Shown: one piece after another, positions 1,363-63,999 of the stretch
How positions within the stretch are numbered: position 1 is the stretch's first letter
How the letters are laid out: every line of letters starts with the position of its first letter
Assembly: GCA_002269645.1 (NCBI GenBank)
Contig: NIVC01001164.1
Coordinates: 1 to 64,000, forward strand
Reading direction: 5' to 3'
DNA: 64,000 bases
Source: Macrostomum lignano
Taxonomy: Eukaryota
Made by a program: the position numbers and the translations under genes
Notes under the pieces: generated by a model
What the model saw: the letters and a program-made list of their open reading frames with translations, nothing else
What the model was told of the DNA's origin: nothing
Database searches by the model: none

Positions 1363-7600
<6,238 letters not shown>

Positions 7601-8204: not shown

Positions 8205-8770
<566 letters not shown>

Positions 8771-9013
8771 TTCATATAATACATACAGTATTAGTTGCAC
8801 ACTACTACGGGTAGCATCATATGGCTATCTTGTCAACAAATCGCTAGAGCGGCAGTCGATTGTCCAATTAAAATACAACGTCTTACTGTACGCAGCCCTC
8901 ATGTGTAAGATTGCTATAAGTGTAAGCATTGTTGCTAGCTGATTCATTTCTAGACACGGACAAACCAGTGAGTGAGTAATACGACCAACAGTTCAGAGCA
9001 ATAGGTTTGCAAG

Positions 9014-18807
<9,794 letters not shown>

Positions 18808-29495: not shown

Positions 29496-29770
29496 TCAAG
29501 AAATGCTCACCTCTCACGCGCAGCAACCCCTCCGGGGTTGTGGGGGCGATAAAATCGATTTCTGCTTCTCTTGAACTGCCCAATAATTATTGATTCTCAG
29601 CGGGCGGGGAGGCGGCATGAAATTCCAACCCAACCCCCAGTTTTTATTCTGTTCTTCTTCGTCTTTTCTTTCCCCGACATTTTCATTTCCGAGGAGAGGA
29701 AAGCAGTGCAGTGTGCATGTGGTGAACAATACAAATTCCCAAACCCAGTACAGCCTGTTCTGGATACATG

Positions 29771-30559
29771 CTGCGGCGACGCGTGGATCGACGCCAACCG
29801 GAGAGACGGCTCAGCGTGCTTGGCTACGCCGATGACCTCGCCCTGCTGTCCTCGACCGTCGAGGGCGCCCAACGACAGCTGGATAGGCTGGTTGCCGTTG
29901 CGGCGAGCGTCGGCCTGGTGGTCAACACGCAGAAGACCGTCGTGCTATGCGTGCCGGACGACACCGAGGCTGCAATCTTCTGCCGAGGCGCTGACGGACA
30001 GGCGAGTGAGCTTCCAAGATGTCAGCAGTTCGTCTACCTCGGCGGTCTGGTTCCCGACGTCCGCGAGGATCTGCGGCGTCGCCGAGGACTTGCCTGGGCT
30101 GCCTTTCGTTCTATAAGGTCAGTCCTGCAGTCCGAGGCCCTACCGGACCGCCAGAGGGCGGCGCTGTTCCAGGCGGTGATCGAGACCGTCCTGTTATACG
30201 ACGCCGAGACCTGGACGCTGACAGACTCGCTCGAGGCTCAAGTCGACGCGGCACACGCTGGCCTGCTGCGCGCCGCCTTCAAGATCGGCAACGAGCGAGT
30301 CACCAACACGGCGCTCCATCATCGCGCCGGCCTGGCCCGTCCTAGCGATCTGCTGCGCCGTCGGCGACTCCAGCTGGCAGGCCACGTCATCCGCGCCGAG
30401 GCCTACTGTCCGGAGCCGGTGCAGGAGGTGCTGTACTTACGTTGCAGGCACCCTACCGGCGGGGACAGGCGAGGACTCGGCGCTACGTCGACTGTCTGCT
30501 GGCTGACGCCGGCGCCCCGGACTCTGCCGGCGGTGCGGCCTTTGTTCGCGCCCAAGCTT
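29771..30559 (+). mobile_element. 5'-truncated non-LTR retrotransposon (RTE-like) 3' end
   Basis: RT motif LSVLGYADDLALLS..VNTQKT..FVYLGG..LLYDAETW; (TTG)n tail; 12-bp TSD tctggatacatg at 29759-29770 and 30560-30571. Confidence 0.92.
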
Positions 30560-31456
30560 CGAAGCGCGCCATCTGACGCTGCTTTTGCGAACTGGCAGCG
30601 TACTCTGTTGTTGTTGTTGTCTGGATACATGATGCAGGCACTCGCCCCTCAGATGATCACTGTGCCCAGTAGATCACCTTCATCAGTATTTAGTTATCAA
30701 TAATAGCACCTGTCAATCAAATTTACAGTGACAATAGTCAAAGAGTAGTGAGATTGCCTTACACAGAGTGATAATAAACCGAAACTTGAAACCAATTTTC
30801 GAGCCACCATCTATAGCTAACTGTGCCAGAGAAGCGATGTCCAGGTGGCCACACAAAATTCAACAGAATCTGCTGTCTTTATGCAGCAAAAGTCGCGGGC
30901 CTACGCAGAAATCTGTGCAGGAGCCGCTAGCTCCATGACAACTCGCTCGCTCTTCCGGCTCTGGTCGGTGATAGCTCGTACCTTCTGCACCAATGTCCGA
31001 GTTGGGCGCCTTAGCGCTCAGCATCTCGAGCACGGTGCAACAGAAACCCGGTTCACATGTCGATTTTTGGCTTGAGCTCAACTTTGTCCTAAGTTGAGTT
31101 TATTTTAAATCGATAAGCTTGATTTTGCCTCGATGGGTGAGCATAACTGTTGAGAAGTTAGTGTTCCTGTGCTAGATGGCCGGTCTGTGACTGTGTGGAA
31201 ATTCAGGAGGCAGGCAAATCTGCAAGTTGTTTAACAACGAGGCTTTGCTTTAAAAACGTAGCTAACTGAAAATTAGTTGCACGACTCCCGCCCTCGAGAA
31301 TAAAGTCCGAGGCGGAAAACCGAAGGTCAATAACTTTGCCACCATGCGGACAGGCAGCAGCGGGCTCAAGAAACTCTGCTTTGGATCCTCTGCGGTGAAT
31401 CGCCTATTGGAGTTGCTGTTGCTGTTCAGACTGGGCTGCATTTCGTTCTGGGAGGG

Positions 31457-45178: not shown

Positions 45179-47587
45179 ATGGCAACAGCATCATCAACCT
45201 CTGGCGGCGGCAGTGGTGGTGACCCAGACTCCGCCGACCAGGAGAAGCTGTCAGCCAGCCAGCAATTCGAGTGCAACATCTGCCTGGAGACGGCCACGGA
45301 GCCCGTGGTGAGCCACTGCGGCCACCTGTTCTGCTGGGCCTGCGTCTATCGCTGGATGGAGACGCAGGGCCGCTCGCCGTCCTGTCCGGTGTGCAAAAGT
45401 GGCATTAGTCGGGACAAAGTCATCCCGCTGTATGGCCGAGGCGGCTCCGGCAATACCACGGATCCGCGCAGCAGGGTGCCGCCGCGGCCACAGGGCCAGC
45501 GCTCAGAGCCAGAGGCTGGAGGCGGCCTGCATGGCTTCGCTGACGGCCTGTTTGGCCAGCAGCACGGCGGCACTTTTCAGTTCACCTTCGGCATTGGCGG
45601 CTTCCCGTTTGCCTTCTTTGGCACTAATTTTAATATGAGTGAGTTGCTCCCGCATTGAGGCCATTAGAATCCGCATTGCGGCCATTAGAATCCACATTGC
45701 GGCCATTAGAATCCACATTGCGGCCATTAGAATTCACATTGCGGCCATTAGAATCCACATTGCGGCCATTAGAATCCACCATTGCGGCCATTAGAATCCG
45801 CATTGCGGCCATTAGAATCCACATTGCAACCATTAGAATCCACATTGCGGCCATTAGAATCCAAATTGCGGCCATTAGAATCCACATTGCGGCCATTAGA
45901 ATCCGCATTAAGGCCATTAGAATCCACATTGCGGCCATTAGAATCCCACATTGCGGCCATTAGAATCCGCATTAAGGCCATTAGAATCCACATTGCGGCC
46001 ATTAGAATCCACATTGCGGCCATTAGAATCCACATTGCGGCCATTAGAATCCACATTGCGGCCATTAGAATCCGCATTGCGGCCATTAGAATCCACATTG
46101 CGGCCATTAGAATCCACATTGCGGCCATTAGAATCCACATTGCGGCCATTAGAATCCACATTGCGGCCATTAGAATCCACATTGCGGCCATTAGAATCCA
46201 CATTGCGGCCATTAGAATCCACATTGCGGCCATTAGAATCCACATTGCGGCCATTAGAATCCACATTGCGGCCATTAGAATCCGCATTGCGGCCATTATA
46301 ATCCACATTGCGGCCATTAGAATCCACATTGCGGCCATTAGAATCCGCATTAAGGCCATTAGAATCCACATTGCGGCCATTAGAATCCGCATTGCGGCCA
46401 TTAGAATCCACATTGCGGCCATTAGAATCCACATTGCGGCCATTAGAATCCGCATTGAGGCCATTAGAATCCACATTGCGGCCATTAGAATCCATATTAA
46501 GGCCCTTAGAATCCACAGGCCATTAGAATCCACATTAAGGCCATTATAATCCGCACTGACGCCATTAGAATCCACATTGAGGCCATTAGAATCCACATTG
46601 AGGCCATTAGAATCCGCAATGACGCCATTAGAATTCGCACTGACGCCATTAGAATCCGCACTGACGCCATTAGAATCCACACTGACGCTATTAGAATCCG
46701 CACTGACGCCATTAGAATCCACACTGACGCCATTAGAATCCGCACTGACGCCATTAGAATTCGCACTGACGCCATTAGAATCCACACTGACGCCATTAGA
46801 ATTCGCACTGACGCCATTAGAATCCGCACTGACGCCATTAGAATCCGCACTGACGCCATTAGAATCCACACTGACGCCATTAGAATCCGCACTGACGCCA
46901 TTAGAATTCGCACTGACGCCATTAGAATCCGCACTGACGCCATTAGAATCCGCACTGACGCCATTAGAATCCGCACTGACGCCATTAGAATCCACACTGA
47001 CGCCATTAGAATCCGCACTGACGCCATTAGAATTCGCACTGACGCCATTAGAATCCACACTGACGCCATTAGAATCCACACTGACGCCATTAGAATCCAC
47101 ACTGACGCCATTAGAATCCGCACTGACGCCATTAGAATCCACACTGACGCCATTAGAATTCGCACTGACGCCATTAGAATCCGCACTGACGCCATTAGAA
47201 TCCGCACTGACGCCATTAGAATCCGCACTGACGCCATTAGAATCCACACTGACGCCATTAGAATCCGCACTGACGCCATTAGAATTCGCACTGACGCCAT
47301 TAGAATCCACACTGACGCCATTAGAATCCACACTGACGCCATTAGAATCCACACTGACGCCATTAGAATCCGCACTGACGCCATTAGAATCCACACTGAC
47401 GCCATTAGAATTCGCACTGACGCCATTAGAATTCGCACTGACGGCTACTCAATGCCACATTCCCGCAGATGGGCAGAACAGGAACCGAGACGCCTTTGGT
47501 CAGGTGAACACTGAAGAAGACGCCTTCCTCAGCAAAGTGTTTCTCTACATTGCAATCATATTTGTTGTGTGGCTGCTACTAGCCTGA
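45179..47587 (+). CDS. RNF185: ER-membrane RING E3 ubiquitin ligase RNF185/RNF5 family (192 aa)
   Basis: Exons 45179-45638 and 47469-47587. C3HC4 RING FECNICLETATEPVVSHCGHLFCWACVYRWM..CPVCKSGISRDKVIPLYGRG, DPR..PPRPQGQR, FGIGGFPF and C-terminal TM EEDAFLSKVFLYIAIIFVVWLLLA. Confidence 0.93.
45649..47443. repeat. 21-bp minisatellite, ~85 copies, two subtypes, filling the RNF185 intron
   Basis: gcggccattagaatccacatt switches to gacgccattagaatccgcact near 46550-46620. Confidence 0.98.
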
Positions 47588-49600: not shown

Positions 49601-52600
49601 ATGGGCCAGATACTAACCAGGCGCCAGTACGAAGACCTGCTGATTGACGGCTTGGCGGTCGCGGCAGTCAGCAACGCAGCAAGGCAGCAGTCGAACAGAG
49701 CCGACCGATCCCGAGCTCTGGCCCGATTTCGCGACCTATCGGAATTGCCGCCGGAACTGGCGCTGGCTATTCTGAGCCACCTGGGCCCTACGGATCTGTG
49801 CCTGGCCGCCTGCGTCTGGGGCCATTTGGCTAATGACGAGCTGCTGTGGCAGGCCCTGTGCAAAAATGCCTGGGCCTATTGTACAGCTTATAGCGTGCCG
49901 GGCCGCTCCTACCGGCAGCTCTATCTGCGATTGGATGAAGCTTCACTCAGCTTCAATGCCGACTGCTTCGATGGTTTTGCCTGCTTTCTTAGGCACGAAA
50001 TTCTTATTGACGAGCCGGGAGAATTGGCCCTGTTCTTTCACGGCGCTCGGGTGCTGGACAGGCGCCAGGTTAGCCGCTTCATGGAGACTCGGTGAGGCGC
50101 TGCTGCTTGGCTGGGCTGTGCTGTGCTGTACTGACTCACTAGCTGGGGATTGTGAAGCTTGGGATTCTGAGGGAAATTTGGGGATTGTGAAGCTTGGGAT
50201 TCTGAGAGAAACTTGGGTATAGTGAAGCTTGGGGGTTCTAGGAGAAATTTGGGGATTGTGAAGCTGGGGATTCTGAGAGAAATTTGGGGATTGTGAAGCT
50301 TGGGATTTTGAGAGAAACTTGGGGATTGTGAAGCTTGGGATTCTGAGAGAAACTTGGGTATAGTGAAGCTTGGGGATTCTGAGAGAAATTTGGGGATTGT
50401 GAAGCTTGGGATTCTGAGAGAAATTTGGGGATTGTGAAGCTTGGGATTCTGAGGGAAATTTGGGGATTGTGAAGCTTGGGATTCTGAGAGAAACTTAGGG
50501 ATTGTGAAGCTTGGGATTCTGAGAGAAACTTGGGGATTGTGAAGCTTGGGATTCTAGGAGAAATTTGGGGATTGTGAAGCTTGGGATTCTGAGGGAAATT
50601 TGGGGATTCTGAAGCTTGGGATTCTGAGGGAAATTTGGGGATTCTGAAGCTTGGCGATTCTGAGGGAAATTCGGGGATTGTGATGCTGGGGTGTTCTAAG
50701 AGAAACTTGGGGATTGTGAAGCTTGGGATTCTGAGAGAAACTTGGAGATTGTGAAGCTGGGGATTCTGAGAAAAATTTTGGGATTGTGAAGCTTGGGATT
50801 CTGAGAGAAACTTGGAGATTGTGAAGCTGGGGATTCTGAGAGAAATTTGGGGATTGTGAAGCTGGGGATTCTGAGAGAAACTTGGGGATTGTGAAGCTGG
50901 GGATTCTGAGAGAAATTAGGGGATTGTGAAGCTGGGGATTCTGAGAGAAACTTGGGGATTGTGAAGCTTAGGATTCTGAGGGAAATTTAGGGATTGTGAA
51001 GCTTGGGGGTTCTGAGAGAAACGGGGATTGTAAAGCTTAGGATTCTGGGGTAAATTTAGGGATTCTGAAGCTTGGGTGTTCTGAGAGAAACTTGGGGATT
51101 GTGAAGCTTAGGATTCTGGGGGAAATTTGTTCTGAAGCTTAGGGGTTCTGAGAGAAACTTGGGGATTGTGAAGCTTAGGATTCTGAGGGAAATTTAGGGA
51201 TTGTGAAGCATTGGGGTTCTGAGAGAAACTTAGGGATTCTGAATCTTGGGGTCCTGAGAGAAATTTGGGGATTCTGAAGCTTAGGATTCTGGGGGAAATT
51301 TGGGGATTCTGAAGCTTGGCGGTTCTGAGACAAATTTGGGGATTCTGAAGCTTGGGGGTTCTGATGGAACTTTAGAGATTCTGAAGCTTGAGGATTGTAG
51401 AGGAAATTTGAGGATTGTAGGGGAAATTTGAGGATTGTAGGGGAAATTTGAGGAATGCAGGGAAAATTTGAGGATTGCAGGGGGAATTTGAGGAATGCAG
51501 GGGAAATTTAAGGATTGTAGGGGAAATTTGAGGATGGGGTGAAGCTGTATGATTGTGACCTTTGTTATTACCTAAAGTACATTATCGATTCCCGCCCACT
51601 CAGGCCCGACGTTCTAGACAAACTGATGGAACGGAAAAGCTTCGAAAACCAGTTTTTGCCGAATGCGCTTCGTAAATTTTTCAACGAAGTGGAGGCGCCA
51701 AACGCTAGAAACGAATACTTGAGCCTGCTGCTGGACCGGTTTAGCCTGCGCTTTGTGGCCTCCAACCCTGGCACTGGACTGAGCAAAGGTTTGTCCAGTC
51801 TGCTAGTCTGGTAGAGTAGGAGTGGAGTCTGGTGGAGTAGGTGTAGAGTCTGGTGGAGTAGGTGTAGAGTCTGGTAGAGTAAGAGTGGAGTCTGGTAGAG
51901 TAAATGTAGAGCCTGGTAGAGTAAGAGTGGAGTCTGGTAGAGTAAGAGTGGAGTCTGGTGGAGTAGGTGTAGAGTCTGGTAGAGTAAGAGTGGAGTCTGG
52001 TAGAGTAAATGTAGAGTCTGGTAAAGTAAGAGTGGAGTCTGGTAGAGTAAGAGTGGAGTCTGGTAGAGTAAGAGTGGAGTCTGGTAGAGTAAGAGTGGAG
52101 TCTGGTAGAGTAAGAGTGGAGTCTGGTAGAGTAAGAGTGGAGTCTGGTAGAGTAAGAGTGGAGTCTGGTAGAGTAAGAGTGGAGTCTGGTAGAGTAAGAG
52201 TGGAGTCTGGTAGAGTAAGAGTGGAGTCTGGTGGAGTAGGTGTAGAGTGTAGTATAGTAGATGTGGAGTCTGGTGGAGTAGGTGTAGAGTCTGGTAGAGT
52301 AGGTGTAGAGTCTGGTAGAGTAGGTGTAGAATCTGGTAGAGTAGGTGTTGAGTCTGGTAGAGTAGGTGTAGAATCTGGTAGAGTAGGTGTTGAGTCTGGT
52401 AGAGTAGGTGTAGAGTCTGGTAGAGTAAGAGTGGAGTCTGGTGGAGTAGGTGTAGTAGAGTCTGGTATAGTAGATGTGGAGTCTGGTGGAGTAGGTGTAG
52501 AGTCTGGTAGAGTAGGTGTAGAATCTGGTAGAGTAGGTGTAGAGTCTGGTAGAGTAGGTGTAGAGTCTGGTAGAGTAGGTGTAGATTCTGGTAGAGTAGG

Positions 52601-54448
52601 TGTAGAGTCTGGTATAGTAAATGTAGAGTCTGGTAGAGTAGGTGTAGAGTCTAGTAGAGTAGGTGTAGAGTCTGGTAGAGTAGGTGTAGAGTCTGGTCGA
52701 GTAGGTGTAGAGTCTGGTATAGTAGATGTGGAGTCTGGTGGAGTAGGTGTAGAGTCTGGTAGAGTAGATGTGGAGTCTGGTAGAGTAAGAGTGGAGTCTG
52801 GTCGAGTAAGAGTGGAGTCTGGTAGAGTAAGAGTGGAGTCTGGTAGAGTAGGTGTAGAGTCTGGTAGAGTAGGTGTAGAATCTGGTAGAGTAGGTGTAGA
52901 ATCTGGTAGAGTAGGTGTTGAGTCTGGTAGAGTAGGTGTAGAGTCTGGTAGAGTAGGTGTAGAGTCTGGTAGAGTAGGTGTGGAGTCTGGTAGAGTAAGA
53001 GTGGAGTCTGGTGGAGTAGGTGTAGAGTCTGGTATAGTAGATGTGGAGTCTGGTGGAGTAGGTGTAGAGTCTGGTAGAGTAGGTGTAGAATCTGGTAGAG
53101 TAGGTGTAGAATCTGGTAGAGTAGGTGTAGAGTCTGGTAGAGTAGGTGTAGAGTCTGGTAGAGTAGGTGTAGATTCTGGTAGAGTAGGTGTAGAGTCTGG
53201 TAGAGTAAATGTAGAGTCTGGTAGAGTAGGTGTAGAGTCTAGTAGAGTAGGTGTAGAGTCTGGTAGAGTAGGTGTAGAGTCTGGTCGAGTAGGTGTAGAG
53301 TCTGGTATAGTAGATGTGGAGTCTGGTGGAGTAGGTGTAGAGTCTGGTAGAGTAGATGTGGAGTCTGGTAGAGTAAGAGTGGAGTCTGGTCGAGTAAGAG
53401 TGGAGTCTGGTAGAGTAAGAGTGGAGTCTGGTAGAGTAGGTGTAGAGTCTGTTAGAGTAGGTGTAGAATCTGGTAGAGTAGGTGTAGAATCTGGTAGAGT
53501 AGGTGTTGAGTCTGGTAGAGTAGGTGTAGAGTCTGGTAGAGTAGGTGTAGAGTCTGGTAGAGTAGGTGTGGAGTCTGGTAGAGTAAGAGTGGAGTCTGGT
53601 GGAGTAGGTGTAGAGTCTGGTATAGTAGATGTGGAGTCTGGTGGAGTAGGTGTAGAGTCTGGTAGAGTAGGTGTAGAATCTGGTAGAGTAGGTGTAGAAT
53701 CTGGTAGAGTAGGTGTAGAGTCTGGTAGAGTAGGTGTGGAGTCTGGTAGAGTAAGAGTGGAGTCTGGTGGAGTAGGTGTAGAGTCTGGTATAGTAGATGT
53801 GGAGTCTGGTGGAGTAGGTGTAGAGTCTGGTAGAGTAGGTGTAGAGTCTGGTAGAGTAGGTGTAGAATCTGGTAGAGTAGGTGTAGAGTCTGGTAGAGTA
53901 GGTGTAGAGTCTGGTAGAGTAGGTGTAGATTCTGGTAGAGTAGGTGTAGAGTCTGGTAGAGTAGGTGTAGAGTCTTGTAGAGTAGGTGTAGAGTCTGGTA
54001 TAGTAGATGTGGAGTCTGGTGGAGTAGGTGTAGAGTCTGGTAGAGTAGATGTGGAGTCTGGTAGAGTAAGAGTGGAGTCTGGTCGAGTAGGTGTAGAGTC
54101 TGGTAGAGGTATGGAGTCCGCGGTAGAGTACATGTAGATGTTGCCAATATTGCCAATTTGTCAGTAAAAATTGTGGGCCATGGTTTTAAATCCAATTCAT
54201 CCGCGTTTAAAACTGCTGAATTCGCACAAAAATGCCCCGCAGAGATGGTGTTCATCCTGTGCTACTCGCTCATACTACTGTCAGTAGACCTGTGCAGTCC
54301 GCACGTGAAAAATAAAATGTCTAAACGAGAATTCATTCGCAATACGAGGCGAGCCACAACCCCAATTAGTGACGACTTTCTAGGTCATCTGTACGATAAC
54401 ATCTACCTGGTTGGACACGTGGCGCCAACCACAGCTTGCAGCTATTAG
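49601..54448 (+). CDS. FBXO8: F-box only protein 8 (F-box + Sec7), ~293 aa
   Basis: Exons 49601-50091 (MGQ start; in-frame ATG also at 49580), 51604-51788, 54243-54448. LSELPPELALAILSHL..TDLCLAACVW..LANDELLWQALCK, NQFLPNALRKFF, LCYSLILLSVDLCSPHVKNKMSKREFIRNTRRA..DFLGHLYDNIYLVGHVA. Confidence 0.94.
50144..51537. repeat. 35-bp G-rich minisatellite (20-bp variant at the 3' end) filling FBXO8 intron 1
   Basis: Unit ggggattgtgaagcttgggattctgagagaaactt. Confidence 0.96.
51803..54135. repeat. 21-bp minisatellite, ~110 copies, filling FBXO8 intron 2
   Basis: Unit gagtctggtagagtaggtgta with variants and larger duplicated blocks. Confidence 0.98.
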
Positions 54449-54621
54449 CTGTGGCGTGATATTGAAGCCTAGGAAACTTCTATTTAAGTCTGTGTTGTTT
54501 TGCTAGAGATATCACACCATATGTGGCTTCTGGGGGGGGGGGTGTGCTTGCAGTTCTATAGTTTGTTAGCTATTATAAATTTTCTTAAAATAACACTTCC
54601 AGTCTTAAATATTGCGTCAGT

Positions 54622-54995
54622 TCACTCGGCTCCCTGTCAGTCAGAATCCCTCAGTTCACTCTGCTCCCCATCAATCAGTCAGAATCCCTTAGTTCACTCT
54701 GCTCCCCATCAATCAGTCAGAATCCCTTAGTTCACTCTGCTCCCCATCAGTCAGAATCCCTTAGTTCACTCTGCTCCCCATCAATCAGTCAGAATCCCTT
54801 AGTTCACTCTGCTCCCCATCAGTCAGAATCCCTTAGTTCACTCTGCTCTCCATCAGTCAATCCCTTAGTTCACTCTGCTCCCCATCAGTCAATCCCTTAG
54901 TTCACTCTGCTCCCCATCAGTCAGAATCCCTCAGTTCACTCAGCTCCCCATCAGTCAGTCAGTCAGAGTCCCTCGGTTCACTCTGCTCCCCATCA
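54622..54995. repeat. 38-42-bp minisatellite, ~9 copies
   Basis: Unit cagtcagaatcccttagttcactctgctccccat(caat). Confidence 0.93.
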
Positions 54996-55414
54996 ATAAT
55001 AGCTACTTTACTAATTCTGTGGGATAACTGCTGTTACCCTGGACTTACGTACCATACGCTCGTACAGTACATGTACGAGTATGTGAATATAATGCGGTTA
55101 AATATTTTAATATGTAGTGTGCATGATAAAGATTGCACTTTTCGTCCGTTCTGTACATAGGTATTTAATTTGGGCGAATCAGTTCGTTGAGTTCGCCTTT
55201 GTCCTTGCAGTAACTATTGAGAATGGATGGAGTTACTGAGAGCTCTTTTTGATTGGCTTCGCTGATTTCTGCTCAAACTTGTTGGCATCTATTTTAGTGT
55301 GCGGTTCTTCTGTAACCTCTGATGTTATCAAAGATTTTTCAGACAGTGTTTAAGGTAGACTTTGATATTGGCGTTATCTTTTCTTCTCTTTGCATGTTTT
55401 GGACAGCTTGGATA

Positions 55415-57012
55415 GGGATCTGACATTGAATGGGGGATTCTAGTTAAATATAGGATCTGGGTAGAAATCTGACATTGAATGGGGGGGTTCTAGTTAAATA
55501 TAGGATCTGGGTAGAAATCTGACATTGAATGGGGGATTCTAGTTAAATATAGGATCTGGGTAGAAATCTGACATTGAATGGGGGGGGGTTCTAGTTAAAT
55601 ATAGGATCTGGGTAGAAATCTGACATTGAATGGGGGATTCTAGTTAAATATAGGATCTGGGTAGAAATCTGACATTGAATGGGGGGGTTCTAGTTAAATA
55701 TAGGATCTGGGTAGAAATCTGACATTGAATGGGGGGGGTTCTAGTTAAATATAGGATCTGGGTAGAAATCTGACATTGAATGGGGGATTCTAGTTAAATA
55801 TAGGATCTGGGTAGGAATCTGACATTGAATGGGGGGGTTCTAGTTAAATATAGGATCTGGGTAGGAATCTGACATTGAATGGGGGGGGGTTCTAGTTAAA
55901 TATAGGATCTGGGTAGAAATCTGACATTGAATGGGGGGTTCTAGTTAAATATAGGATCTGGGTAGAAATCTGACATTGAATGGGGGGTTCTAGTTAAATA
56001 TAGGATCTGGGTAGAAATCTGACATTGAATGGGGGATTCTAGTTAAATATAGGATCTGGGTAGAAATCTGACATTGAATGGGGGGGGTTCTAGTTAAATA
56101 TAGGATCTGGGTAGAAATCTGACATTGAATGGGGGGGGTTCTAGTTAAATATAGGATCTGGGTAGAAATCTGACATTGAATGGGGGGGGTTCTAGTTAAA
56201 TATAGGATCTGGGTAGAAATCTGACATTGAATGGGGGGTTCTAGTTAAATATAGGATCTGGGTAGAAATCTGACATTGAATGGGGGATTCTAGTTAAATA
56301 TAGGATCTGGGTAGGAATCTGACATTGAATGGGGGGTTCTAGTTAAATATAGGATCTGGGTAGAAATCTGGCATTGAATGGGGGGGTTCTAGTTAAATAT
56401 AGGATCTGGGTAGAAATCTGACATTGAATGGGGGGGGGAGTTCTAGTTAAATATAGGATCTGGGTAGGGATCTGACATTGAATGAGGGTTCTAGTTAAAT
56501 ATAGGATCTGGGTAGGAATCTGACATTGAATGGGGGGGTTCTAGTTAAATATAGGATCTGGGTAGAAATCTGACATTGAATGGGGGGGTTCTAGTTAAAT
56601 ATAGGATCTGGGTAGGGATCTGACATTGAATGAGGGTTCTAGTTAAATATAGGATCTGGGTAGAAATCTGACATTGAATGGGGGTTCTAGTTAAATATAG
56701 GATCTGGGTAGAAATCTGACATTGAATGGGGGGGTTCTAGTTAAATATAGGATCTGGGTAGGGATCTGACATTGAATGAGGGTTCTAGCTAAATATAGGA
56801 TCTGGGTAGAAATCTGACATTGAATGGGGGGGTTCTAGTTAAATATAGGATCTGGGTAGAAATCTGACATTGAATGGGGGGGTTCTAGTTAAATATAGGA
56901 TCTGGGTAGAAATCTGACATTGAATGGGGGGGGTTCTAGTTAAATATAGGATCTGGGTAGAAATCTGACATTGAATGGGGGGGGGGTTCTAGTTAAATAT
57001 AGGATCTGGATA
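55415..57012. repeat. ~54-bp minisatellite with a variable G-run, ~29 copies
   Basis: Unit gacattgaatg(G)nttctagttaaatataggatctgggtagaaatct. Confidence 0.97.
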
Positions 57013-57515
57013 GGGATGTGATTTTTATTAGTATTTAATTATATAAATATTTTCGTAAGGAATGTTTTTTGAGATTAGAATTTGCATCATGGATAGAAAA
57101 TAGCGCTTGTTAGCCCTAATGATATTATTTAAAAAATTGCGTTAATTATTTTACAGACCTGTTTTCTTAGATCGATAAATGATAACCTTGTAACTATGCT
57201 AAATTGCCTATATGCTTGTACCTTAAAGATAAATGTTCTGTAACTGCTTTATTTTTCTACACAGAATCTACAGTTAGTAATTAATGTTACTCATGTATAT
57301 TCAGACTTTTCGCATGCAGGTTTGAAATGAAAATACACTACAGTAGTATTTCTTATGCAGAGACCTAAATTAGGTTAAATTATATATAGATTTTGTCACC
57401 CTGTGCACGCGTTAATCATTGGGTGTTTACTACTGAAGTTATTTTTGTAAGTTTTCTTTTACAAACAATCTTGAAATGCTGTACCAGCAAGATATTTAAA
57501 GTGGGTTAACACCAG

Positions 57516-59254
57516 CAAGATTCTTATGTTGGCCGACTTTGTGAAGCCAAGATTAGCCTTGTTAATCCGGCTGCAGACTGCAGCTTGCTGCATCCATTCG
57601 ATAGTAAGTCTAATTAATACAAATTGCAAGTTTATTTAGTCCATTAATAATTGATTAACATGAAACTGCTCAGGAGAGTCAGTTAGTCTTCAGTTAGTCT
57701 ACAGTAGTCTACAGTAAGCCTACAGTTAGTCTACAGTTACTCTACAATTAGTCTACAGTATAAGCCTACAGTTAGTCTACAGTAAGCCTACAGTTAGTCT
57801 TCAGTTAGTCTACAGTAAGTCTACAGTTAGTCTACAGTAAGCCTACAGTTAGTCTACAGTAAGCCTACAGTTAGTCTTCAGTTAGTCTACAGTAAGCCTA
57901 CAGTTAGTCTACAGTTAGTCTACAGTAAGCCTACAGTTAGTCTACAGTAAGCCTACAGTTAGTCTTCAGTTAGTCTACAGTAAGCCTACAGTTAGTCTAC
58001 AGTAAGCCTACAGTTAGTCTTCAGTTAGTCTACAGTAAGCCTATAGTTAGTCTACAGTAAGCCTACAGTTAGTCTACAGTTACTCTACAATTAGTCTACA
58101 GTATAAGCCTACAATTAGTCTACAGTAAGCCTACAGTTAGTCTTCAGTTAGTCTACAGTAAGCCTACAGTTAGTCTACAGTAAGCCTACAGTTAGTCTTC
58201 AGTTAGTCTACAGTAAGCCTACAGTTAGTCTTCAGTTAGTCTACAGTAAGCCTACAGTTAGTCTACAGTAAGCCTACAGTTAGTCTTCAGTTAGTCTACA
58301 GTAAGCCTACAGTTAGTCTACAGTTAGTCTACAGTAAGCCTACAGTTAGTCTTCAGTTAGTCTACAGTAAGCCTACAGTTAGTCTTCAGTTAGTCTACAG
58401 TTAGTCTTCAGTTAGTCTACAGTAAGCCTACAGTTAGTCTTCAGTTAGTCTACAGTTAGTCTTCAGTTAGTCTACAGTAAGCCTACAGTTAGTCTTCAGT
58501 TAGTCTACAGTAAGCCTACAGTTAGTCTTCAGTTAGTCTACAGTTAGTCTACAGTCAGTCTACAGCAATAAGAGCGAGTTACATGTCGCAATCCTACACG
58601 CTCAAGATTATTTTATTTTCTCTTTCTTATCTCCTTTGTTCTCTATAAATCTCATCTTCTGTCTCCTTTCATGTCAATCCCATTTATTGTCTCTCATCTC
58701 ATCTCATTCGATCCTCTTCTCTCTTGTCTATTCCCAATCCTTTTCTTTCATCTTGCCCGCAACCTAGATGCTGTAATTCCCTAATGTCCCCTCCGTCAAC
58801 CATGCTGCAATCCCATTGTTCATTTACTGAGCTCTGAGAAAACACTTCATCACACGTACAATTCACTGTTGCTCGATCAGTGGCTCAGTCGGTAGCAGCA
58901 GAAGCCGCGGAGGCCCGTAGCAACCAGGCCGCCCTTCGGCTGGAATCCGCTGCGACGCTGTCCCAGCCAGTGGAGCTGCGACCAGACCGTCAGGCTGGAG
59001 TCTCCGGCACCGGCGTCAATCGGCCTCCACAGGACAGCGGCTACGCCAGCAGTCTGTACACCGATTCCCGGCTCATTGAACTGCTTCCTACTGGAGATGC
59101 TGCTACACCGCCGAACACTCTTGCAGTGTCCACTCCGCCATGGACGTCGATTTCGGAGTCCGTGACCGATGCCGACTGCAACATGCTGAGCATTGGTTCC
59201 AGCGACGGCCCCGACTGCCCCGACTGCCCCGAGACCAATGAGTCCCCTGAGTAA
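57516..59254 (+). CDS. Candidate last two exons of an unidentified gene (low-complexity, disordered product)
   Basis: Terminal exon 58881-59254 (cag acceptor, open GC-rich frame with DSGYAS, stop TAA). Phase-compatible upstream exon 57516-57603 (QDSYVGRLCEAKISLVNPAADCSLLHPFD, gtaagt donor). No family recognised. Confidence 0.4.
57675..58563. repeat. 11-bp-monomer satellite with higher-order 22/33-bp organisation
   Basis: Monomers cagttagtcta, cagtaagccta and cagttagtctt. Confidence 0.96.
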
Positions 59255-59293
59255 TATATGTGCACTGATGGCTTCAAATTCGCCTTTAACTGA

Positions 59294-59722
59294 CAGGGGC
59301 GTAGCCAGAGGGGGGCAAGGGGGCCGTGGCCCCCCCCCCCCAATCACCAACTCTGGCCTTAGCGCCCCCCCCCTATAAGAAACTGGCGCCCCCCTAAAAG
59401 AAACTGGCGCCCCCCCTAAAAGAAACTGGCGCCCCCTAAAAGAAACTGGCGCCCCCTAAAAGAAACTGGCGTCCCCCTCCTAAAAGAAACTGGCGCCCCC
59501 CCTAAAAGAAACTGGCGCCCCCCTCTCTGCTGCTACCCCTATAAGAAACTGGCGCCCCCTCCTAAAAGAAACTGGCGCCCCTCCTCCTATAATAAACTGG
59601 CGCCCCCCTAAGAAGCTGGCGCCCCCCCCCCAAAGAAGCTGGCGCCCCCCCCCTAAGAAGCTGGCGCCCCCTAACTCACGGCCCCGCCCCCCCCTCAATC
59701 AAAATTCCTGGCTACGCCCCTG
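59294..59722. mobile_element. MITE-like element (PIF/Harbinger-style termini) with an internal ~20-bp tandem array
   Basis: Perfect 15-bp TIR caggggcgtagccag (59294-59308) / ctggctacgcccctg (59708-59722); internal aaagaaactggcgccccccta repeats. Confidence 0.8.
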
Positions 59723-60904
59723 CTTTAACATGACGTGTTGACTGGGTGCTGACTAGACCTGATAAACTTCAGGAGGAAGTTAGCTGTTATACTCTAGGTT
59801 TACTTAATGGACTTCAATATACTCTGGATTGTGCTGGCTGAAATCCTAATTTAATTTGCTTTTAAAGTACTAGTGTATATAAAAAATATTTTCTGTACAG
59901 TGTAATTGTAACTCTATCTGAGAATGCGCAGATTGTATAGAGCATAAGTTTACTTTAATATCTTTCATTCTGTTTTTTGCTTTACTGTGGAGTTAGTTAT
60001 CTAAAGATGAGTAAATATGATTGGTACAGGGTCCCGCGCGCCAAGATTCGAACCCGGGATCCACGAGTTCTGAGTGCTACAACTTAATATGTAGCTTGTA
60101 GGCCTGATCATTTTCATGGCAGACAAAATTTATGCAAGCTAAAAGATTGCCTACTACGAGTAACAAGTAGCGACATTTTTTGTGAGGCCTGTCTATTCTA
60201 CGGTCCTTTATAGCGTTTTAGGGCATTGCATGAATTCCATATTGGTGAGCACCACAAATTTTGTTCCATAGAAGTATTTAGATTTTCTTTTAAGCAACAA
60301 ATGAATTAGCAAATCAGTCTAAATTTTTTTCGGTAACGATACGAGCTCAACTCGGAGCAAACTTAGTTGAAAAAAAAGATGTTTATTTGGATTATTTTGT
60401 CAAGTTAATGCAGTTAAATTAAAAACTATGATCCTAGCTAATGAAGGTACAAACTCTGGTTTAAAATTATTAGACAAAAAATAAACATTGATAAACAGTC
60501 TCTGTTAGTATTGGCGTATATATGAATAGTAATTTTCTAATGGGAAACTACGAGTAGCAAGGCCTAGCTAATATTAGAATAACAGAGCAGGTCGACAACA
60601 AAAACTACGAGTAAAAGTATAAAAGTGAAGATTTTAAATCTAAATATTTCAGGCAGAAGATGGGCTGAGTGGAGAACTTTATGAAGTCCAAGATTCACGT
60701 CCACGATATTTTCTCTGCAGTCTGCATTTCAGAGCTGGTTGTAAGAGCAGTTGTAAGAGTTGCTTGTATCGTCCCGTGGTCATCCCCAATTGACAAGGGA
60801 ACAGTGACAATGCATCAAAATATCTAATTGTCCAACCCAACTGCAAGCCCATAAAAACCACCGAATACCGCTCACCCCACCTACTGCCTGGCTTCGGAAA
60901 ATTC

Positions 60905-61215
60905 AATAAATATTCAGCAGAATCAAACTGCAGCTTAAACAAAAAACACAACAGCAACAGTGACGGAGATACTGGGGCCTGAATAAATAAATAAATAAAT
61001 AAATAGTCAGCAGAATCAAACTGCAGCTTAAACAAAAAACACAACAGCAACAGTGACGGAGATACTGGGGCCTGAATAAATAAATAAATAAGTAAATATT
61101 CAGCAGAATCAAACTGCAGCTTAAACAAAAAACACAACAGCAACAGTGACGGGGATACTGGGGCCTGAATAAATAAATAAATAAATAAATAGTCAGCAGA
61201 ATCAAACTGCAAGCT
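60905..61215. repeat. ~93-bp tandem repeat, ~3.5 copies, each ending in (TAAA)n
   Basis: cagcagaatcaaactgcagcttaaac...ggggcctgaataaataaataaat repeated. Confidence 0.93.
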
Positions 61216-61461
61216 TAAGCAGAGAGCACAACAGCAACAATGTTTTACTTGGAAACTTGAATGCTTGATCGTATGATCTTAATCTTGAATTTATGTATCT
61301 TTATTTGTGTATTGTGAATTCCAAAGTTCGATCTTCAATTCGGTTTCCGAATTTCGAATTTTAGGATGTTGTGTGGCTACTTAGCTAATTTTTTATTTCA
61401 AAGCTTCCACTTATCATAGTTTTGTTACGAATTTCCTAGCATTTGTTCAGAATTACAGAAG

Positions 61462-63999
61462 TCACAGAATTAGACAACCACCACCACTGGATTCTTCTTT
61501 GAATCCGTCCTCGGTCTTCTTGATTTTTTTCCACGACTCTGGCACTTCCACTCTCTTGCCGTAGTGTTTTCTCAGCGATTCCTTGTGGTTGCTTACAAAC
61601 CACCGCCATAGCAGACTGGATTCATCACCAGGAGGAGAACAGGGAGGATACCAGTGTGGAAAACATTTGCTAAGATCCTCCATTTTGTAACTCTTATGCC
61701 GAAAGGTAAAAGTGTCCAGTTCACCACAGGTTGCCACTGACAGGTTCCCGGATTCTGGATCAGTAATTCCCGCAACGCCCGCTGGCCTGACGCTCCTACA
61801 CCGTCGACCGTACTCGCACCAGGAAAGCCATCCGCTTGTCTTCACTTGACGTGTCAATGTTGGTTCTCCACACAACGGACAGTCCTGAAGGCCATCCCAC
61901 TCTTTGTCGAGCAGTGAGACATGCGGCGCTTTGCCATCCCACTTCAGTTGCTCTGGTGACGTCGGTGGATTGTGAAGAAAATCCGTGACGTTTTCAAGAC
62001 ATTCAAGTAGTCTCTGATTGAAATTTTGCAAGTCGCTAATGGAGTATTGGCTTGCAACTTTGAAGTCTTCCACGTGCAGACCAATCTTATCACCCTGTTC
62101 GCAAAATCTTTCTATCCAAAACTGAAGCAGGTTGGTGCAACTGGCGCGGTCACTCATCTGCTGCTTAGCCATTTCCCTCGCGCGTTTTTTAATTGGCTCA
62201 AGAAGATTATGCACCTTCACCTTGAGAAATTTTGAGTACTTGCTGTTGCCTTCTGGCTTGAAAAATTGTTCTTCCATCTTTCGCACCAGCCACTTGCGTG
62301 TGAAGCCTTTACTATCTTTGATGAATTCGATCCAATCGTCAAATCTATTTGTGTTAATCAGACTTTTCGTCACCTGCTTCACAAGATTCTTGTTTTCTTG
62401 ATCTAAAAAATCTTTACTGACAAAGTTGGCAGCTTGTCGCAATGCAGTTTCGCTGACGAAGTTCCTGATGATGCCTGCGATTACACCAGCACTGCGCACA
62501 TCCTGGCCCTCTCGCTTGCAGCAGTTCCTGAACTCTTCAAAGACAGTATCCTTGAATGCTTGCAGCTGAGCTCTGACCCCAAACTGCTGCTCAAATTGCT
62601 CATGTGCCGTCTTAAATTCTGCGGCTGCATACCAGCAAGCGTAAACGCTGAAAAAATCTTTAAATTGTGGTTGCAGTTTGACCCACCGATATCCACGAAT
62701 TATTTTGAGATGCTCCTTTGATTGATCGCTGTTGAACTCATCAATCTCTTTATCCACAAAATGTATTATTGATGAAAAGACGCCATGATTGACAATATCG
62801 ATGCCATTGTTTTTTTGGAACTGGATGATTTCTTTCTCAACTTTTTTCAGAACCGAGTTGGAAAAATTGAACACCTGTGTCTTGCACTCTTCCTCGGATG
62901 GCCAGAACTTTTTGAATAAGCCAACATGCCACTTTTTCTCGTAATGATCAGTCCTGATCAGATCGACCCTCAATGGCACACAGGTTTGCTTACCTGCCAT
63001 TGATTTCTCTATCTCATCGTGTATCTCACGCCTCCTACTCTCGAACTCTGAGATCAAAGTCTTCTCAGCCTGATCAAAAAAATCTATCGTCTGCATCGGT
63101 GCTACATGTATATGGACTTCCTTCATCTGCTCTTCCCACATGGTATCAAATTCTTTTCTCAGCTCGTCATCGGCCATCTGAGAGCGATTTTCTGCCACCA
63201 TCTTTTCTGCCACTTGGCGCGCTTTATCCATAAACTTCTGCTTTAGCTGATCCGCTTCGCCTCTGCTCTGCAGAAGTACTCGCCTCTCCTCCTTCACGTC
63301 CGTCAGTCTCTCGTTACACTCGCGAGTAAGTGATTTGACATCTTCCTCAAAGTTGTTAAAAGTTCTTTGTTGCCATTGAACGATTGTCTGATTTTCTTCG
63401 TGTTTTTTGAAAAACGCTTCGAGTTCCTTTTGCTTCTCAGACTGATTTTCCTTGATGAATTTATTCGTTTCGGAGATCTCCGTTTTTAGCCTCTCAGGCA
63501 GGCTCTGGGCATCTTGACAAGAACGCAGCTTTGGGGCCGCCGTCTCTTTCACTTGCTCCCATGCTTTCTTCTCGAGATCGCGCCTAAGTTCAGAGTACTT
63601 CTTGTTGACTTCTTTGTAGGCCCTGAGCTCGAGTGTGTTCTGGAAACTAAATACAAAATCTTCCTTGACAACTGCCTTCCAGAAGTCAGCTGCACGAACA
63701 GAAAACTCTTCGAACGTCAACTTAGAACTGTTCGTACCCTTCAGGCACTGTACAATCTTGTACTTTGTACCCTGAACTCCTCTGCTGTAACCTGGATTGA
63801 CAGGAGCTAACGGAGGTTCTCCCTCCCACAAGTTTGTCAGGAAAATGACGTTTTCGTTCACATCAAACTTAAGGAGATCAGCGAAGCGCTTTAAATTTGT
63901 CACTCCTTCCTCATTCGCTGCACCCTCGACTGTACTGTCCAGAGTCCGCAACAGACGATCTCTCGCTTCCTGCATTTTCTCACGTGAGTCAACAGCACA
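61462..63999 (-). CDS. GVIN1: Very large inducible GTPase (GVIN1/VLIG, URGCP-like) family, C-terminal part; ORF open to the window edge
   Basis: Single uninterrupted frame of >840 codons. Motifs DVNENVIFLTNLWEGEPPLAPVNPGYS, DFWKAVVKEDFVFSFQNTLE, DCPLCGE and LLWRWFVSNHKESLRKHYG match my recollection of VLIG post-GTPase and C-terminal regions; ends GGGCLIL*. The P-loop lies outside the window. Confidence 0.8.
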   Translation of the reverse strand, partial: CAVDSREKMQEARDRLLRTLDSTVEGAANEEGVTNLKRFADLLKFDVNENVIFLTNLWEGEPPLAPVNPGYSRGVQGTKYKIVQCLKGTNSSKLTFEEFSVRAADFWKAVVKEDFVFSFQNTLELRAYKEVNKKYSELRRDLEKKAWEQVKETAAPKLRSCQDAQSLPERLKTEISETNKFIKENQSEKQKELEAFFKKHEENQTIVQWQQRTFNNFEEDVKSLTRECNERLTDVKEERRVLLQSRGEADQLKQKFMDKARQVAEKMVAENRSQMADDELRKEFDTMWEEQMKEVHIHVAPMQTIDFFDQAEKTLISEFESRRREIHDEIEKSMAGKQTCVPLRVDLIRTDHYEKKWHVGLFKKFWPSEEECKTQVFNFSNSVLKKVEKEIIQFQKNNGIDIVNHGVFSSIIHFVDKEIDEFNSDQSKEHLKIIRGYRWVKLQPQFKDFFSVYACWYAAAEFKTAHEQFEQQFGVRAQLQAFKDTVFEEFRNCCKREGQDVRSAGVIAGIIRNFVSETALRQAANFVSKDFLDQENKNLVKQVTKSLINTNRFDDWIEFIKDSKGFTRKWLVRKMEEQFFKPEGNSKYSKFLKVKVHNLLEPIKKRAREMAKQQMSDRASCTNLLQFWIERFCEQGDKIGLHVEDFKVASQYSISDLQNFNQRLLECLENVTDFLHNPPTSPEQLKWDGKAPHVSLLDKEWDGLQDCPLCGEPTLTRQVKTSGWLSWCEYGRRCRSVRPAGVAGITDPESGNLSVATCGELDTFTFRHKSYKMEDLSKCFPHWYPPCSPPGDESSLLWRWFVSNHKESLRKHYGKRVEVPESWKKIKKTEDGFKEESSGGGCLIL

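What the first reader, a model, noticed from the sequence alone, without database searches (positions are those of the whole stretch)
61462..63999. Invertebrate very large GTPase (GVIN/VLIG) ending in a CaaX prenylation box
Seen: intronless frame ending ...WKKIKKTEDGFKEESSGGGCLIL*, that is a basic patch, a Gly linker and C-L-I-L. Known: CaaX with terminal Leu is a geranylgeranyltransferase-I substrate, and prenylation targets human GBP1/2/5 to pathogen-containing membranes; I do not recall a CaaX on vertebrate GVIN1/URGCP. Inference: a membrane-anchored VLIG, a candidate cell-autonomous immunity effector in an animal presumed to lack interferon, convergent with GBPs. The Cys/His-rich segment near the C-terminus also looks altered (CPLC retained, following ligands diverged).
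Basis: partly seen in the sequence, partly recalled or inferred. Interest (0 to 1): 0.75.

Follow-up and report, generated by a model that had tools for sequence, protein, structure and literature searches.

The report
Flatworm giant GTPase with lipid-anchor tail
The window's right end holds the last 845 codons of a single-exon VLIG/GVIN-type giant GTPase gene of the flatworm Macrostomum lignano that really does end in a textbook prenylation (CaaX) box, a rare feature in this family, but this copy carries an early stop codon just outside the window and lipid attachment is untested.

Summary
Window 61462-63999 (- strand) is an open frame of 845 codons plus a stop, ending SSGGGCLIL*. The window is M. 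lignano contig NIVC01001164.1, bases 1-64000.

Extending rightwards gives a single-exon gene with URGCP and URGCP_GTPase (VLIG-type) domains (E 2e-99), so the family assignment is right.

- **CaaX rarity.** Of 150 family representatives, only this Macrostomum clade and one other protein end in a canonical CaaX. A follow-up search showed that protein belongs to an unrelated clade from an unidentified eukaryote (CIIL, CIIL, CTIV).
- **Conservation.** The three M. lignano copies all keep the box: CLIL here, CLIM twice. They are so recent (dS 0.05-0.08) that this proves little.
- **Tail.** It is predicted to be disordered.
- **"Basic patch".** WKKIKK is only the family's conserved SWKxITK motif, and the tail's net charge is 0.
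- **Cys/His module.** It keeps 4 of the 11 conserved ligand positions.
- **Stop codons.** The window's copy has an in-frame TAG at codon 170, 1.7 kb outside the window. A second copy has two premature stops. Only the copy on NIVC01000152.1 is intact (1590 aa).

Prenylation is likely for the intact copy but unproven. An immune role is inference only. This is a new variant of a known kind, of moderate interest.

The parts
61462..63999 (-). Last 845 codons plus the TGA stop of a single-exon VLIG/URGCP-type large GTPase gene. GenBank model P0154 has 1380 aa; the full frame has 1586 codons and continues to contig position 66222, beyond the window.
63784..63987 (-). C-terminal end of the VLIG-type G domain (Pfam URGCP_GTPase positions 329-396 of 396). 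The P-loop and the rest of the G domain lie outside the window.
   Evidence: E 4.5e-11; for the whole domain in P0154
61465..63783 (-). Helical middle and C-terminal region (GVIN1 / GVIN1_C type). It is homologous over about 830 residues to VLIG proteins of nemerteans, bivalves, sea urchins, crustaceans and vertebrates.
   Evidence: 682 representatives at E<=1e-10; precomputed PF25974 and PF26772, both weak; AF2 model of the last 400 aa, pLDDT 81.5, mostly helical
61687..61893 (-). Degenerate Cys/His module. CPLC (61870-61881), the Cys of RRC (61798-61800) and the Cys of ATC (61726-61728) are kept. 7 of the 11 family-conserved Cys/His positions are replaced.
61513..61542 (-). PESWKKIKKT, the family-conserved terminal motif (I/V)P(E/D)SWxxITK.
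61477..61512 (-). EDGFKEESSGGG, a clade-specific acidic then Gly/Ser linker. It replaces the family's terminal EEAIxSL helix. Its C-terminal end is predicted disordered.
   Evidence: pLDDT<50 for model residues 393-400 of 400, which are SGGGCLIL
61465..61476 (-). CaaX box C-L-I-L (TGT CTA ATT CTG), followed by TGA at 61462-61464.
61392..61397 (-). AATAAA, a candidate polyadenylation signal 65-70 nt after the stop. It is conserved in all three copies.

Best explanation
The window ends in the 3' two-thirds of a single-exon VLIG/GVIN-type (URGCP-like) giant GTPase gene of Macrostomum lignano. It is one of three recently duplicated (homeologous) copies.

In this small clade the family's usual C-terminal helix has been replaced by a short acidic and Gly/Ser linker that ends in a canonical CaaX box: CLIL here, CLIM in the two sister copies.

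The most likely mechanism for the intact copy is as follows. The cytosolic protein is prenylated on the Cys, then -aaX is cleaved and the new C-terminus is carboxymethylated. By the X-residue rule, CLIL should be geranylgeranylated by GGTase-I. CLIM should be farnesylated, or alternately geranylgeranylated. The lipid tail would tether the GTPase to membranes, in the way GBP1/2/5 use theirs.

Shown:
- family membership;
- single exon;
- the motif and its rarity in the family;
- a disordered tail;
- loss of most Cys/His ligands;
- premature stops in two of the three copies, including the window's.

Inferred:
- prenylation;
- membrane targeting;
- any immune role.
For: - **Family.** Pfam URGCP_GTPase scores E 2e-99 and URGCP E 2.2e-31 in the window's gene model P0154. 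There are 871 homologues at E<=0.001. M. lignano paralogues are named VLIG-type G domain-containing protein by UniProt.
- **Single exon.** The contiguous DNA translates to P0154.
- **Transcription.** The GenBank models come from a genome-guided transcriptome assembly (PMC5730564). The model for this copy keeps CLIL without any intron.
- **Motif quality.** C-L-I-L and C-L-I-M fit the CaaL/I/M consensus. CLIM and the close relatives CIIL, CVIL and CTIL were shown experimentally to be prenylated in a humanized yeast system (PMC11152559).
- **Accessibility.** There is a Gly/Ser run before the Cys, and the AF2 model gives pLDDT<50 for the last 8 residues.
- **Rarity.** Only this clade and P0077 have a canonical CaaX among 150 representatives. 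The nearest M. lignano paralogues P0003, P0004 and P0153 have none.
- **Recurrence.** An unrelated VLIG clade (P0077 CIIL, P0158 CIIL, P0160 CTIV) keeps a CaaX at 45-73% protein identity. Its 46-58 aa linker is only 21-29% identical. That argues a lipid anchor on a VLIG can be selected for.
- **Three copies.** All three M. lignano copies retain the Cys and the L-I.
Against: - The three copies are very young (dS 0.05-0.08). Retention of C-L-I is expected about 80% of the time even without selection.
- dN/dS in the last ~290 codons is 0.86-1.0, against 0.1-0.4 in the N-terminal and G domains.
- The window's copy has TAG at codon 170. The L004 copy has TAA at codon 559 and TGA at codon 677. The lineage may therefore be decaying.
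- The conserved Cys/His module is largely lost.
- There is no adjacent polybasic or second membrane signal.
- No orthologue from another Macrostomum species was found in the protein collections, so there is no test of deeper conservation.
- There are no prenylation, localisation or expression-after-challenge data.
Confidence: 0.6

Rival explanations
1. The CaaX is a fortuitous ending in a decaying gene lineage. The tail arose by drift when the canonical C-terminal helix was lost. The proteins are not prenylated to any functional effect, or are not made at all.
For: Two of the three copies carry premature stops. dN/dS is about 1 in the last ~290 codons. The Cys/His module has lost 7 of 11 conserved ligand positions. 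Copy divergence is too low for the conserved CaaX to be informative. 1-2% of eukaryotic proteins end in Cxxx by one definition (PMC11152559). One canonical case in 147 unrelated representatives is about that background rate.
Against: The motif is near-optimal (a2 = Ile, X = Leu or Met) and sits after a Gly/Ser linker on a disordered tail. One copy is intact over 1590 codons, and the two others have no frameshift. All three stay open apart from 1-2 nonsense codons, so the disablements are very recent. The N-terminal and G domains are under purifying selection (dN/dS 0.1-0.4). A second VLIG clade conserves a CaaX at 45% identity. The only change in the box, L to M, keeps it a prenylation substrate.
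Confidence: 0.3
2. The window's own copy is a pseudogene or a null allele. It gives no full-length VLIG, and at most an N-terminally truncated product from Met 207, as annotated in GenBank model P0154. The biology, if any, belongs to the intact homeologue on NIVC01000152.1.
For: There is an in-frame TAG at codon 170 where the two other copies have AAG. The annotators' CDS starts downstream and lacks the first ~114 positions of the URGCP domain. The WIN branch has the longest dN of the three.
Against: 1416 codons downstream of the TAG remain open. That is not expected if the stop were old. A single-base assembly error or a segregating polymorphism cannot be excluded with the data in hand. This rival concerns which copy is functional, not what the CaaX does.
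Confidence: 0.65
3. The terminal Cys serves another purpose, such as S-palmitoylation, a disulphide, or a replacement metal ligand for the degenerate Cys/His module, rather than prenylation.
For: Several canonical ligands of the upstream module are missing, and the tail Cys is new to this clade.
Against: The Cys lies exactly four residues from the end with aliphatic a1 and a2. It is about 70 residues from the remaining module cysteines and is separated from them by a disordered Gly/Ser linker. No palmitoylation context is evident.
Confidence: 0.05

Closest known systems
Vertebrate GVIN1 / VLIG-1 (interferon-induced very large GTPase 1) and URGCP
   Same: It has the same domain set: the URGCP helical domain, the URGCP_GTPase (VLIG-type) G domain, and the GVIN1 / GVIN1_C helical C-terminal region. 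The coding sequence is on one large exon. It shares the terminal (I/V)P(E/D)SWxxI(T/K)K motif.
   Different: It has only one G-domain unit and about 1590 aa, against about 2400 aa for GVIN1. The Cys/His module keeps 4 of 11 conserved positions. The terminal EEAIxSL helix is replaced by a Gly/Ser linker plus CaaX. No surveyed protein with the canonical tail, including named fish, newt, bivalve, sea urchin and nemertean proteins, has a CaaX. Human GVIN1 was studied with a C-terminal HA tag, and the paper never mentions a CaaX or prenylation of GVIN1 (10.1101/2025.03.24.645074). Flatworms lack interferon (established knowledge), so induction must differ.
Guanylate-binding proteins GBP1, GBP2 and GBP5
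   Same: They are large dynamin-related immune GTPases whose C-terminal CaaX box drives membrane and pathogen targeting (PMC8286824, PMC2903825). GBP paralogues differ in the X residue and hence in farnesyl versus geranylgeranyl, as CLIM and CLIL do here (GBP box sequences are from my own knowledge).
   Different: It is not a GBP. The window's gene model P0154 gives no Pfam GBP hit at E<=0.001, and its G domain is VLIG-type. There is no polybasic stretch next to the CaaX. The resemblance is functional analogy (convergence), not membership.
CaaX-bearing VLIG clade from ENA metagenome assembly ERZ25069296 (P0077, P0158, P0160; organism unknown)
   Same: These are single-exon VLIG proteins ending in CIIL, CIIL and CTIV after a poorly conserved linker.
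   Different: It is a separate branch in the NJ tree and about 25% identical to the window protein. It keeps the canonical ITxExAxxSL helix and all family domains. It adds a 46-58 aa linker with Arg/Lys just before the Cys. This is an independent acquisition.
M. lignano VLIG paralogues P0003/P0151, P0004/P0153 and P0027
   Same: They are from the same genome and form the same species-specific radiation in the tree, at 34-39% identity. The Cys/His module is also partly degenerate.
   Different: None has a CaaX; their tails are ...VKYATI...DFGLA and ...AASHL. They are longer proteins (1725-2487 aa).

Membership tests
VLIG / GVIN (URGCP-like) very large GTPases | VLIG-type G domain (Pfam PF25683 URGCP_GTPase) with a P-loop | tested here: met
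   P0154, the window's gene model, scores E 2e-99 over profile positions 49-396 and has GIQSSGKST and DTEG. Inside the window only the last 68 profile positions are present (E 4.5e-11, below the gathering score as expected for a fragment).
VLIG / GVIN (URGCP-like) very large GTPases | URGCP helical domain (PF25496) N-terminal to the G domain | tested here: met
   P0154 scores E 2.2e-31 (positions 115-298 of 299). The homeologue model P0002 scores E 7.9e-56 over the full domain. In the window's copy the domain is interrupted by the TAG at codon 170.
VLIG / GVIN (URGCP-like) very large GTPases | Family C-terminal region (GVIN1 / GVIN1_C) ending in (I/V)P(E/D)SWxxITK | tested here: met
   Alignments run to query residue ~830 of 845 in most of the 150 best representatives. 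Precomputed PF25974 and PF26772 hits exist, both weak. The motif is present as VPESWKKIKKT.
VLIG / GVIN (URGCP-like) very large GTPases | Conserved Cys/His cluster LWGC-x3-CPFC-xEPC...HxCxQHRP...C...C...H | tested here: not met
   4 of 11 conserved positions are kept, and 3 of the 7 near-invariant ones. The other M. lignano paralogues are also degenerate. This is a divergent feature of the lineage, not a reason to exclude it from the family.
VLIG / GVIN (URGCP-like) very large GTPases | Coding sequence on one very large exon | tested here: met
   L003 10001-14143 translates directly to P0154. L001 has an uninterrupted 1590-codon frame.
VLIG / GVIN (URGCP-like) very large GTPases | Induction by interferon or infection | not testable with these tools
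   No expression data were reachable. Supplement searches for the locus names found nothing.
CaaX-prenylated proteins | Cys at position -4, aliphatic a1 and a2, and an X that selects FTase or GGTase-I | tested here: met
   C-L-I-L here and C-L-I-M in both sister copies. The CaaL/I/M consensus, and CLIM itself, are prenylated experimentally (PMC11152559).
CaaX-prenylated proteins | Flexible, exposed segment upstream of the Cys | tested here: met
   SSGGG precedes the Cys. The AF2 model gives pLDDT<50 for the last 8 residues.
CaaX-prenylated proteins | Motif conserved among orthologues | tested here: inconclusive
   It is kept in all three copies, but these differ by only dS 0.05-0.08 and the tail region has dN/dS of about 1. 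No orthologue from another species was found.
CaaX-prenylated proteins | Covalent isoprenoid on the Cys, -aaX cleavage and carboxymethylation | not testable with these tools
   This needs labelling or mass spectrometry.
Guanylate-binding proteins (GBP) | GBP-type N-terminal G domain (PF02263) | tested here: not met
   P0154 has no PF02263 hit at E<=0.001. Its best G-domain model is URGCP_GTPase. The relation to GBPs is analogy only.

The most novel reading that the evidence does not exclude
Lipid-anchored VLIGs are a real and recurrent innovation. At least two invertebrate or unidentified-eukaryote lineages independently added a prenylation box to a giant GTPase, converging on the GBP1/2/5 way of reaching membranes. 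In M. lignano the homeologues have split between a geranylgeranyl (CLIL) and a farnesyl (CLIM) form. This would give a natural, cofactor-independent membrane-targeting VLIG in an interferon-less animal that can be made transgenic.
Probability: 0.35. Interest if true: 0.7.

Novelty: new variant of a known kind. Interest (0 to 1): 0.5.

Why it matters
VLIG/GVIN proteins are the least understood of the four interferon-inducible GTPase families. Human GVIN1 was only recently shown to coat a cytosolic bacterium, and it needs unidentified interferon-induced cofactors to do so (10.1101/2025.03.24.645074).

A VLIG with its own lipid anchor would give a simple model for how such giant GTPases can engage membranes. 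It would also be a clear case of convergence with prenylated GBPs. M. lignano is transgenic-tractable (PMC5730564), so the Cys-to-Ser experiment is feasible.

Several things temper this. The claim rests on a 4-residue motif. Two of the three copies, including the one in the window, are interrupted by stop codons. The tail shows no signature of selection within this species.

Tried and rejected
- **C-terminal protein search.** A homologous-protein search with only the last 250 aa returned nothing, not even the 85%-identical P0001. I treated this as a tool limitation, not as evidence.
- **PDB sequence search.** The search with the 845 aa found no relevant hit.
- **Fold search.** The search of the AF2 model of the last 400 aa against PDB gave nothing below E 0.1, only generic helical bundles. 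The fold of the degenerate Cys/His module therefore stays unassigned.
- **Literature on VLIG prenylation.** Searches for VLIG/GVIN with CaaX or prenylation found only reviews that mention GBP CaaX and VLIGs separately.
- **Locus names.** Searches for Mlig019691 and Mlig020665 in paper texts and in two supplement sets found nothing.
- **Polybasic patch.** I rejected the idea that WKKIKK is a polybasic membrane signal, because it is the family motif and the tail's net charge is 0.
- **Conservation argument.** I rejected the idea that the conserved CaaX in three copies demonstrates selection, because divergence is too low.
- **P0086 and P0026.** I rejected P0086 (CTAK) and P0026 (CTDA) as CaaX boxes, because their X and a2 residues are unsuitable.
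- **Large nearby ORFs.** The large ORFs at 51.8-54.1 kb are not genes. They are read-through of a 21-bp satellite.
Full report
**1. The observation**

On the - strand, window 61462..63999 is open for 845 codons and ends ...VEVPESWKKIKKTEDGFKEESSGGGCLIL, followed by TGA. The frame runs off the right edge of the window. The last four codons are TGT CTA ATT CTG (61476..61465). An AATAAA lies 65-70 nt after the stop, at 61397..61392.

**2. Where the window comes from and what the whole gene looks like**

The closest database proteins are from Macrostomum lignano. The 90% cluster of one of them contains P0154, a 1380-aa model whose last 845 residues are identical to the window's frame. Its contig is NIVC01001164.1 of assembly GCA_002269645.1. 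Window coordinates equal contig coordinates 1..64000, verified base for base over 12.5 kb.

P0154 is encoded by contiguous DNA with no intron. It carries Pfam URGCP (E 2.2e-31) and URGCP_GTPase (E 2e-99), with a P-loop GIQSSGKST and DTEG. In the window itself only the last 68 profile positions of the G domain are present.

**3. Homologues**

A full HMMER scan of 1.84 billion representatives found 871 homologues at E<=0.001 and 682 at E<=1e-10. Named ones include:
- 'interferon-induced very large GTPase 1-like' of Lineus, Lytechinus, Ruditapes and Saccostrea;
- fish and newt proteins;
- 'VLIG-type G domain-containing protein' of Pinctada, Meganyctiphanes and M. lignano.

Alignments typically run to query residue ~830 of 845.

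**4. How unusual is the CaaX?**

The canonical family C-terminus is ...(I/V)P(E/D)SWxxITKEEAIxSL followed by 0-10 residues.

Among the 150 best representatives, a canonical CaaX occurs only in the Macrostomum cluster and in P0077 (CIIL). P0086 (CTAK) and P0026 (CTDA) have a Cys at -4 but unsuitable residues after it. The nearest M. lignano paralogues, at 34-39% identity (P0003/P0151, P0004/P0153, P0027), have no CaaX. CaaX is therefore not common in VLIGs.

One canonical case in 147 unrelated representatives is about the proteome background of 1-2% (PMC11152559). Rarity alone proves nothing.

**5. A second CaaX clade**

Searching with P0077 found relatives from the same ENA metagenome assembly, ERZ25069296, whose organism is unknown:
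- P0158, 73% identical, ends ...KRMCIIL.
- P0160, 45% identical, ends ...WRMCTIV.

These are also single-exon genes. They keep the canonical ITxExAxxSL helix and then add a 46-58 aa linker. The linker is only 21-29% identical between them, yet each ends in Arg-x-Cys-a-Ile-X.

In an NJ tree this clade is far from the M. lignano clade. Each clade has non-CaaX sisters. That makes two independent acquisitions. In the second clade the motif is conserved at a depth where conservation is informative. This is the best indirect argument that a prenyl anchor on a VLIG can be functional.

**6. The three M. lignano copies**

The loci on NIVC01000152.1 (L001), NIVC01001164.1 (the window, L003) and NIVC01001556.1 (L004) are colinear, including the downstream satellite arrays, at 92-95% identity. 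This fits the known recent genome duplication and redundancy of the DV1 line (PMC5730564).

| Copy | State of the frame | Ending |
|---|---|---|
| L001 | uninterrupted, 1590 codons | SSGGCLIM |
| Window (L003) | TAG at codon 170 (contig 65713-65715), where the others have AAG | SSGGGCLIL |
| L004 | TAA at codon 559 and TGA at codon 677 | SSGGCLIM |

None of the three has a frameshift.

Pairwise dS is 0.05-0.08. dN/dS is 0.1-0.4 over the N-terminal and G domains. It is 0.86-1.0 over the last ~290 codons (for the window part alone).

I draw three consequences:
- The gene lineage was under purifying selection until very recently, and the nonsense codons are young.
- The window's copy may be a pseudogene, a null allele or an assembly error. 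The GenBank model avoids the stop by starting at Met 207.
- The shared CaaX in three such similar copies is expected by descent and is not evidence of selection.

The one change in the box (CTG Leu to ATG Met) keeps it a substrate. By the X rule it changes the predicted enzyme.

**7. The tail in detail**

WKKIKK aligns with the family's SWxxITK motif and is followed by TEDGFKEE. The last 27 residues hold 5 Lys and 5 Asp/Glu. It is not a polybasic second signal.

What is new in this clade is the replacement of the terminal EEAIxSL helix by EDGFKEESS-GG(G)-CLI(L/M).

An AlphaFold2 model of the last 400 residues (17-sequence alignment, mean pLDDT 81.5, pTM 0.71) is mostly helical. It gives pLDDT<50 for the last 8 residues, so the CaaX sits on a disordered, accessible tail.

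CLIM itself, and CIIL, CVIL and CTIL, were prenylated in a humanized yeast system (PMC11152559). CLIL was not among the sequences I saw reported there.

**8. The Cys/His module**

In 112 homologues outside Macrostomum, 11 Cys/His columns are conserved at 60% or more, and 7 of them at 99-100%. The pattern is LWGC-x3-CPFC-xEPC-x6-H ... HxCxQHRP ... C ... C ... H.

The window keeps CPLC, the Cys of RRC and the Cys of ATC. That is 4 of 11, and 3 of the 7 near-invariant columns. The Cys-rich insertion present in many homologues is absent.

That the module binds zinc in canonical VLIGs is inference. A fold search of the model against PDB gave no significant match.

**9. Transcription**

The GenBank annotation of this assembly derives from a genome-guided transcriptome assembly with TransDecoder ORFs (PMC5730564). 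The existence of models P0154, P0001, P0155 and P0002 therefore implies RNA-seq support for these loci. With 92-95% identical copies, though, read assignment is uncertain.

The model for the window's copy is unspliced through CLIL. I could not reach expression tables for these loci.

**10. Verdict**

The identification as an invertebrate VLIG is solid, and the CaaX is real and rare in the family. The mechanism I consider most likely (about 0.6) is prenylation of the intact homeologue(s): geranylgeranyl for CLIL, and farnesyl or alternate geranylgeranyl for CLIM. This would give a membrane-tethered giant GTPase, analogous to GBP1/2/5 but not homologous in its anchor.

The main rival (about 0.3) is a chance motif in a lineage that is losing function. 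For the window's copy specifically, a non-functional or truncated product is more likely than not.

An immune role is extrapolated from vertebrate GVIN1 (10.1101/2025.03.24.645074) and from family expansions in invertebrates. Nothing here tests it.

I found no paper in the held library describing a prenylated VLIG. I rate this a new variant of a known kind, of moderate interest.

Noticed in passing
L003 9890-9892 (contig NIVC01001164.1:65713-65715, 1.7 kb right of the window); L004 codons 559 and 677 of frame 7091-11875: Two of the three homeologous copies carry in-frame nonsense codons (TAG; TAA and TGA) but no frameshifts. Each is a first-position change to T relative to the other copies (AAG, and the E and G codons at those sites). 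Only the L001 copy is intact.
   Followed up: partly
L002 1212-6536, L005 8001-13244 (ENA ERZ25069296): An independent clade of single-exon VLIG genes from an unidentified eukaryote ends in CIIL, CIIL and CTIV after a long, poorly conserved linker. P0077 and P0158 are on contigs of identical length (25,769 bp), probably the same contig. A DIRS-like retroelement (RVT_1 plus a faint integrase hit) lies upstream of P0160.
   Followed up: partly
proteins P0163, P0047, P0173, P0172: Precomputed Pfam lists show VLIG-type GTPases fused to other immune modules. MACPF (PF01823) occurs in two metagenomic proteins and in one from the amoebozoan Pelomyxa schiedti. CARD, PYD and FIIND occur in a lizard (Tiliqua) URGCP-like protein. 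The Pelomyxa hit also suggests the family extends beyond animals.
   Followed up: no
window 50144-61239: The 11 kb downstream of the gene is largely satellite arrays: 35-bp (50144-51418), 21-bp x110 (51805-54108), 49/300-bp (55418-57013), 11/22-bp (57680-58565), ~22/107-bp (59362-59674) and 93-bp (60905-61239). The 21-bp array creates the 770-aa 'ORFs' on both strands at 51803-54137. The arrays are colinear in the homeologous locus L001.
   Followed up: partly
L001 10001-14773: GenBank model P0002 for the intact homeologue stops at 1046 aa with an odd ending (...PMQTALRV), although the genomic frame is open for 1590 codons to CLIM. The annotation hides the only intact CaaX-bearing copy.
   Followed up: yes
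window 51462-54448 (+), seen as L003 21157-24143: The neighbouring called gene has F-box-like and Sec7 domains. The same neighbour flanks the homeologue in L001. Its span overlaps the 21-bp satellite, presumably within an intron.
   Followed up: no
window 29768-30703 (+); 45769-47587 (both strands): A 311-aa ORF has a weak reverse-transcriptase match (RVT_1, E 1.3e-5) and is a probable retroelement remnant. Overlapping ORFs in several frames at 45.8-47.6 kb give only coiled-coil or low-complexity Pfam hits, so they are probably another repeat array.
   Followed up: partly
The search for homologous proteins with the last 250 aa of the window's frame returned no hit, although P0001 is about 88% identical over that stretch. 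Negative results from that tool with short queries should not be trusted.
   Followed up: no
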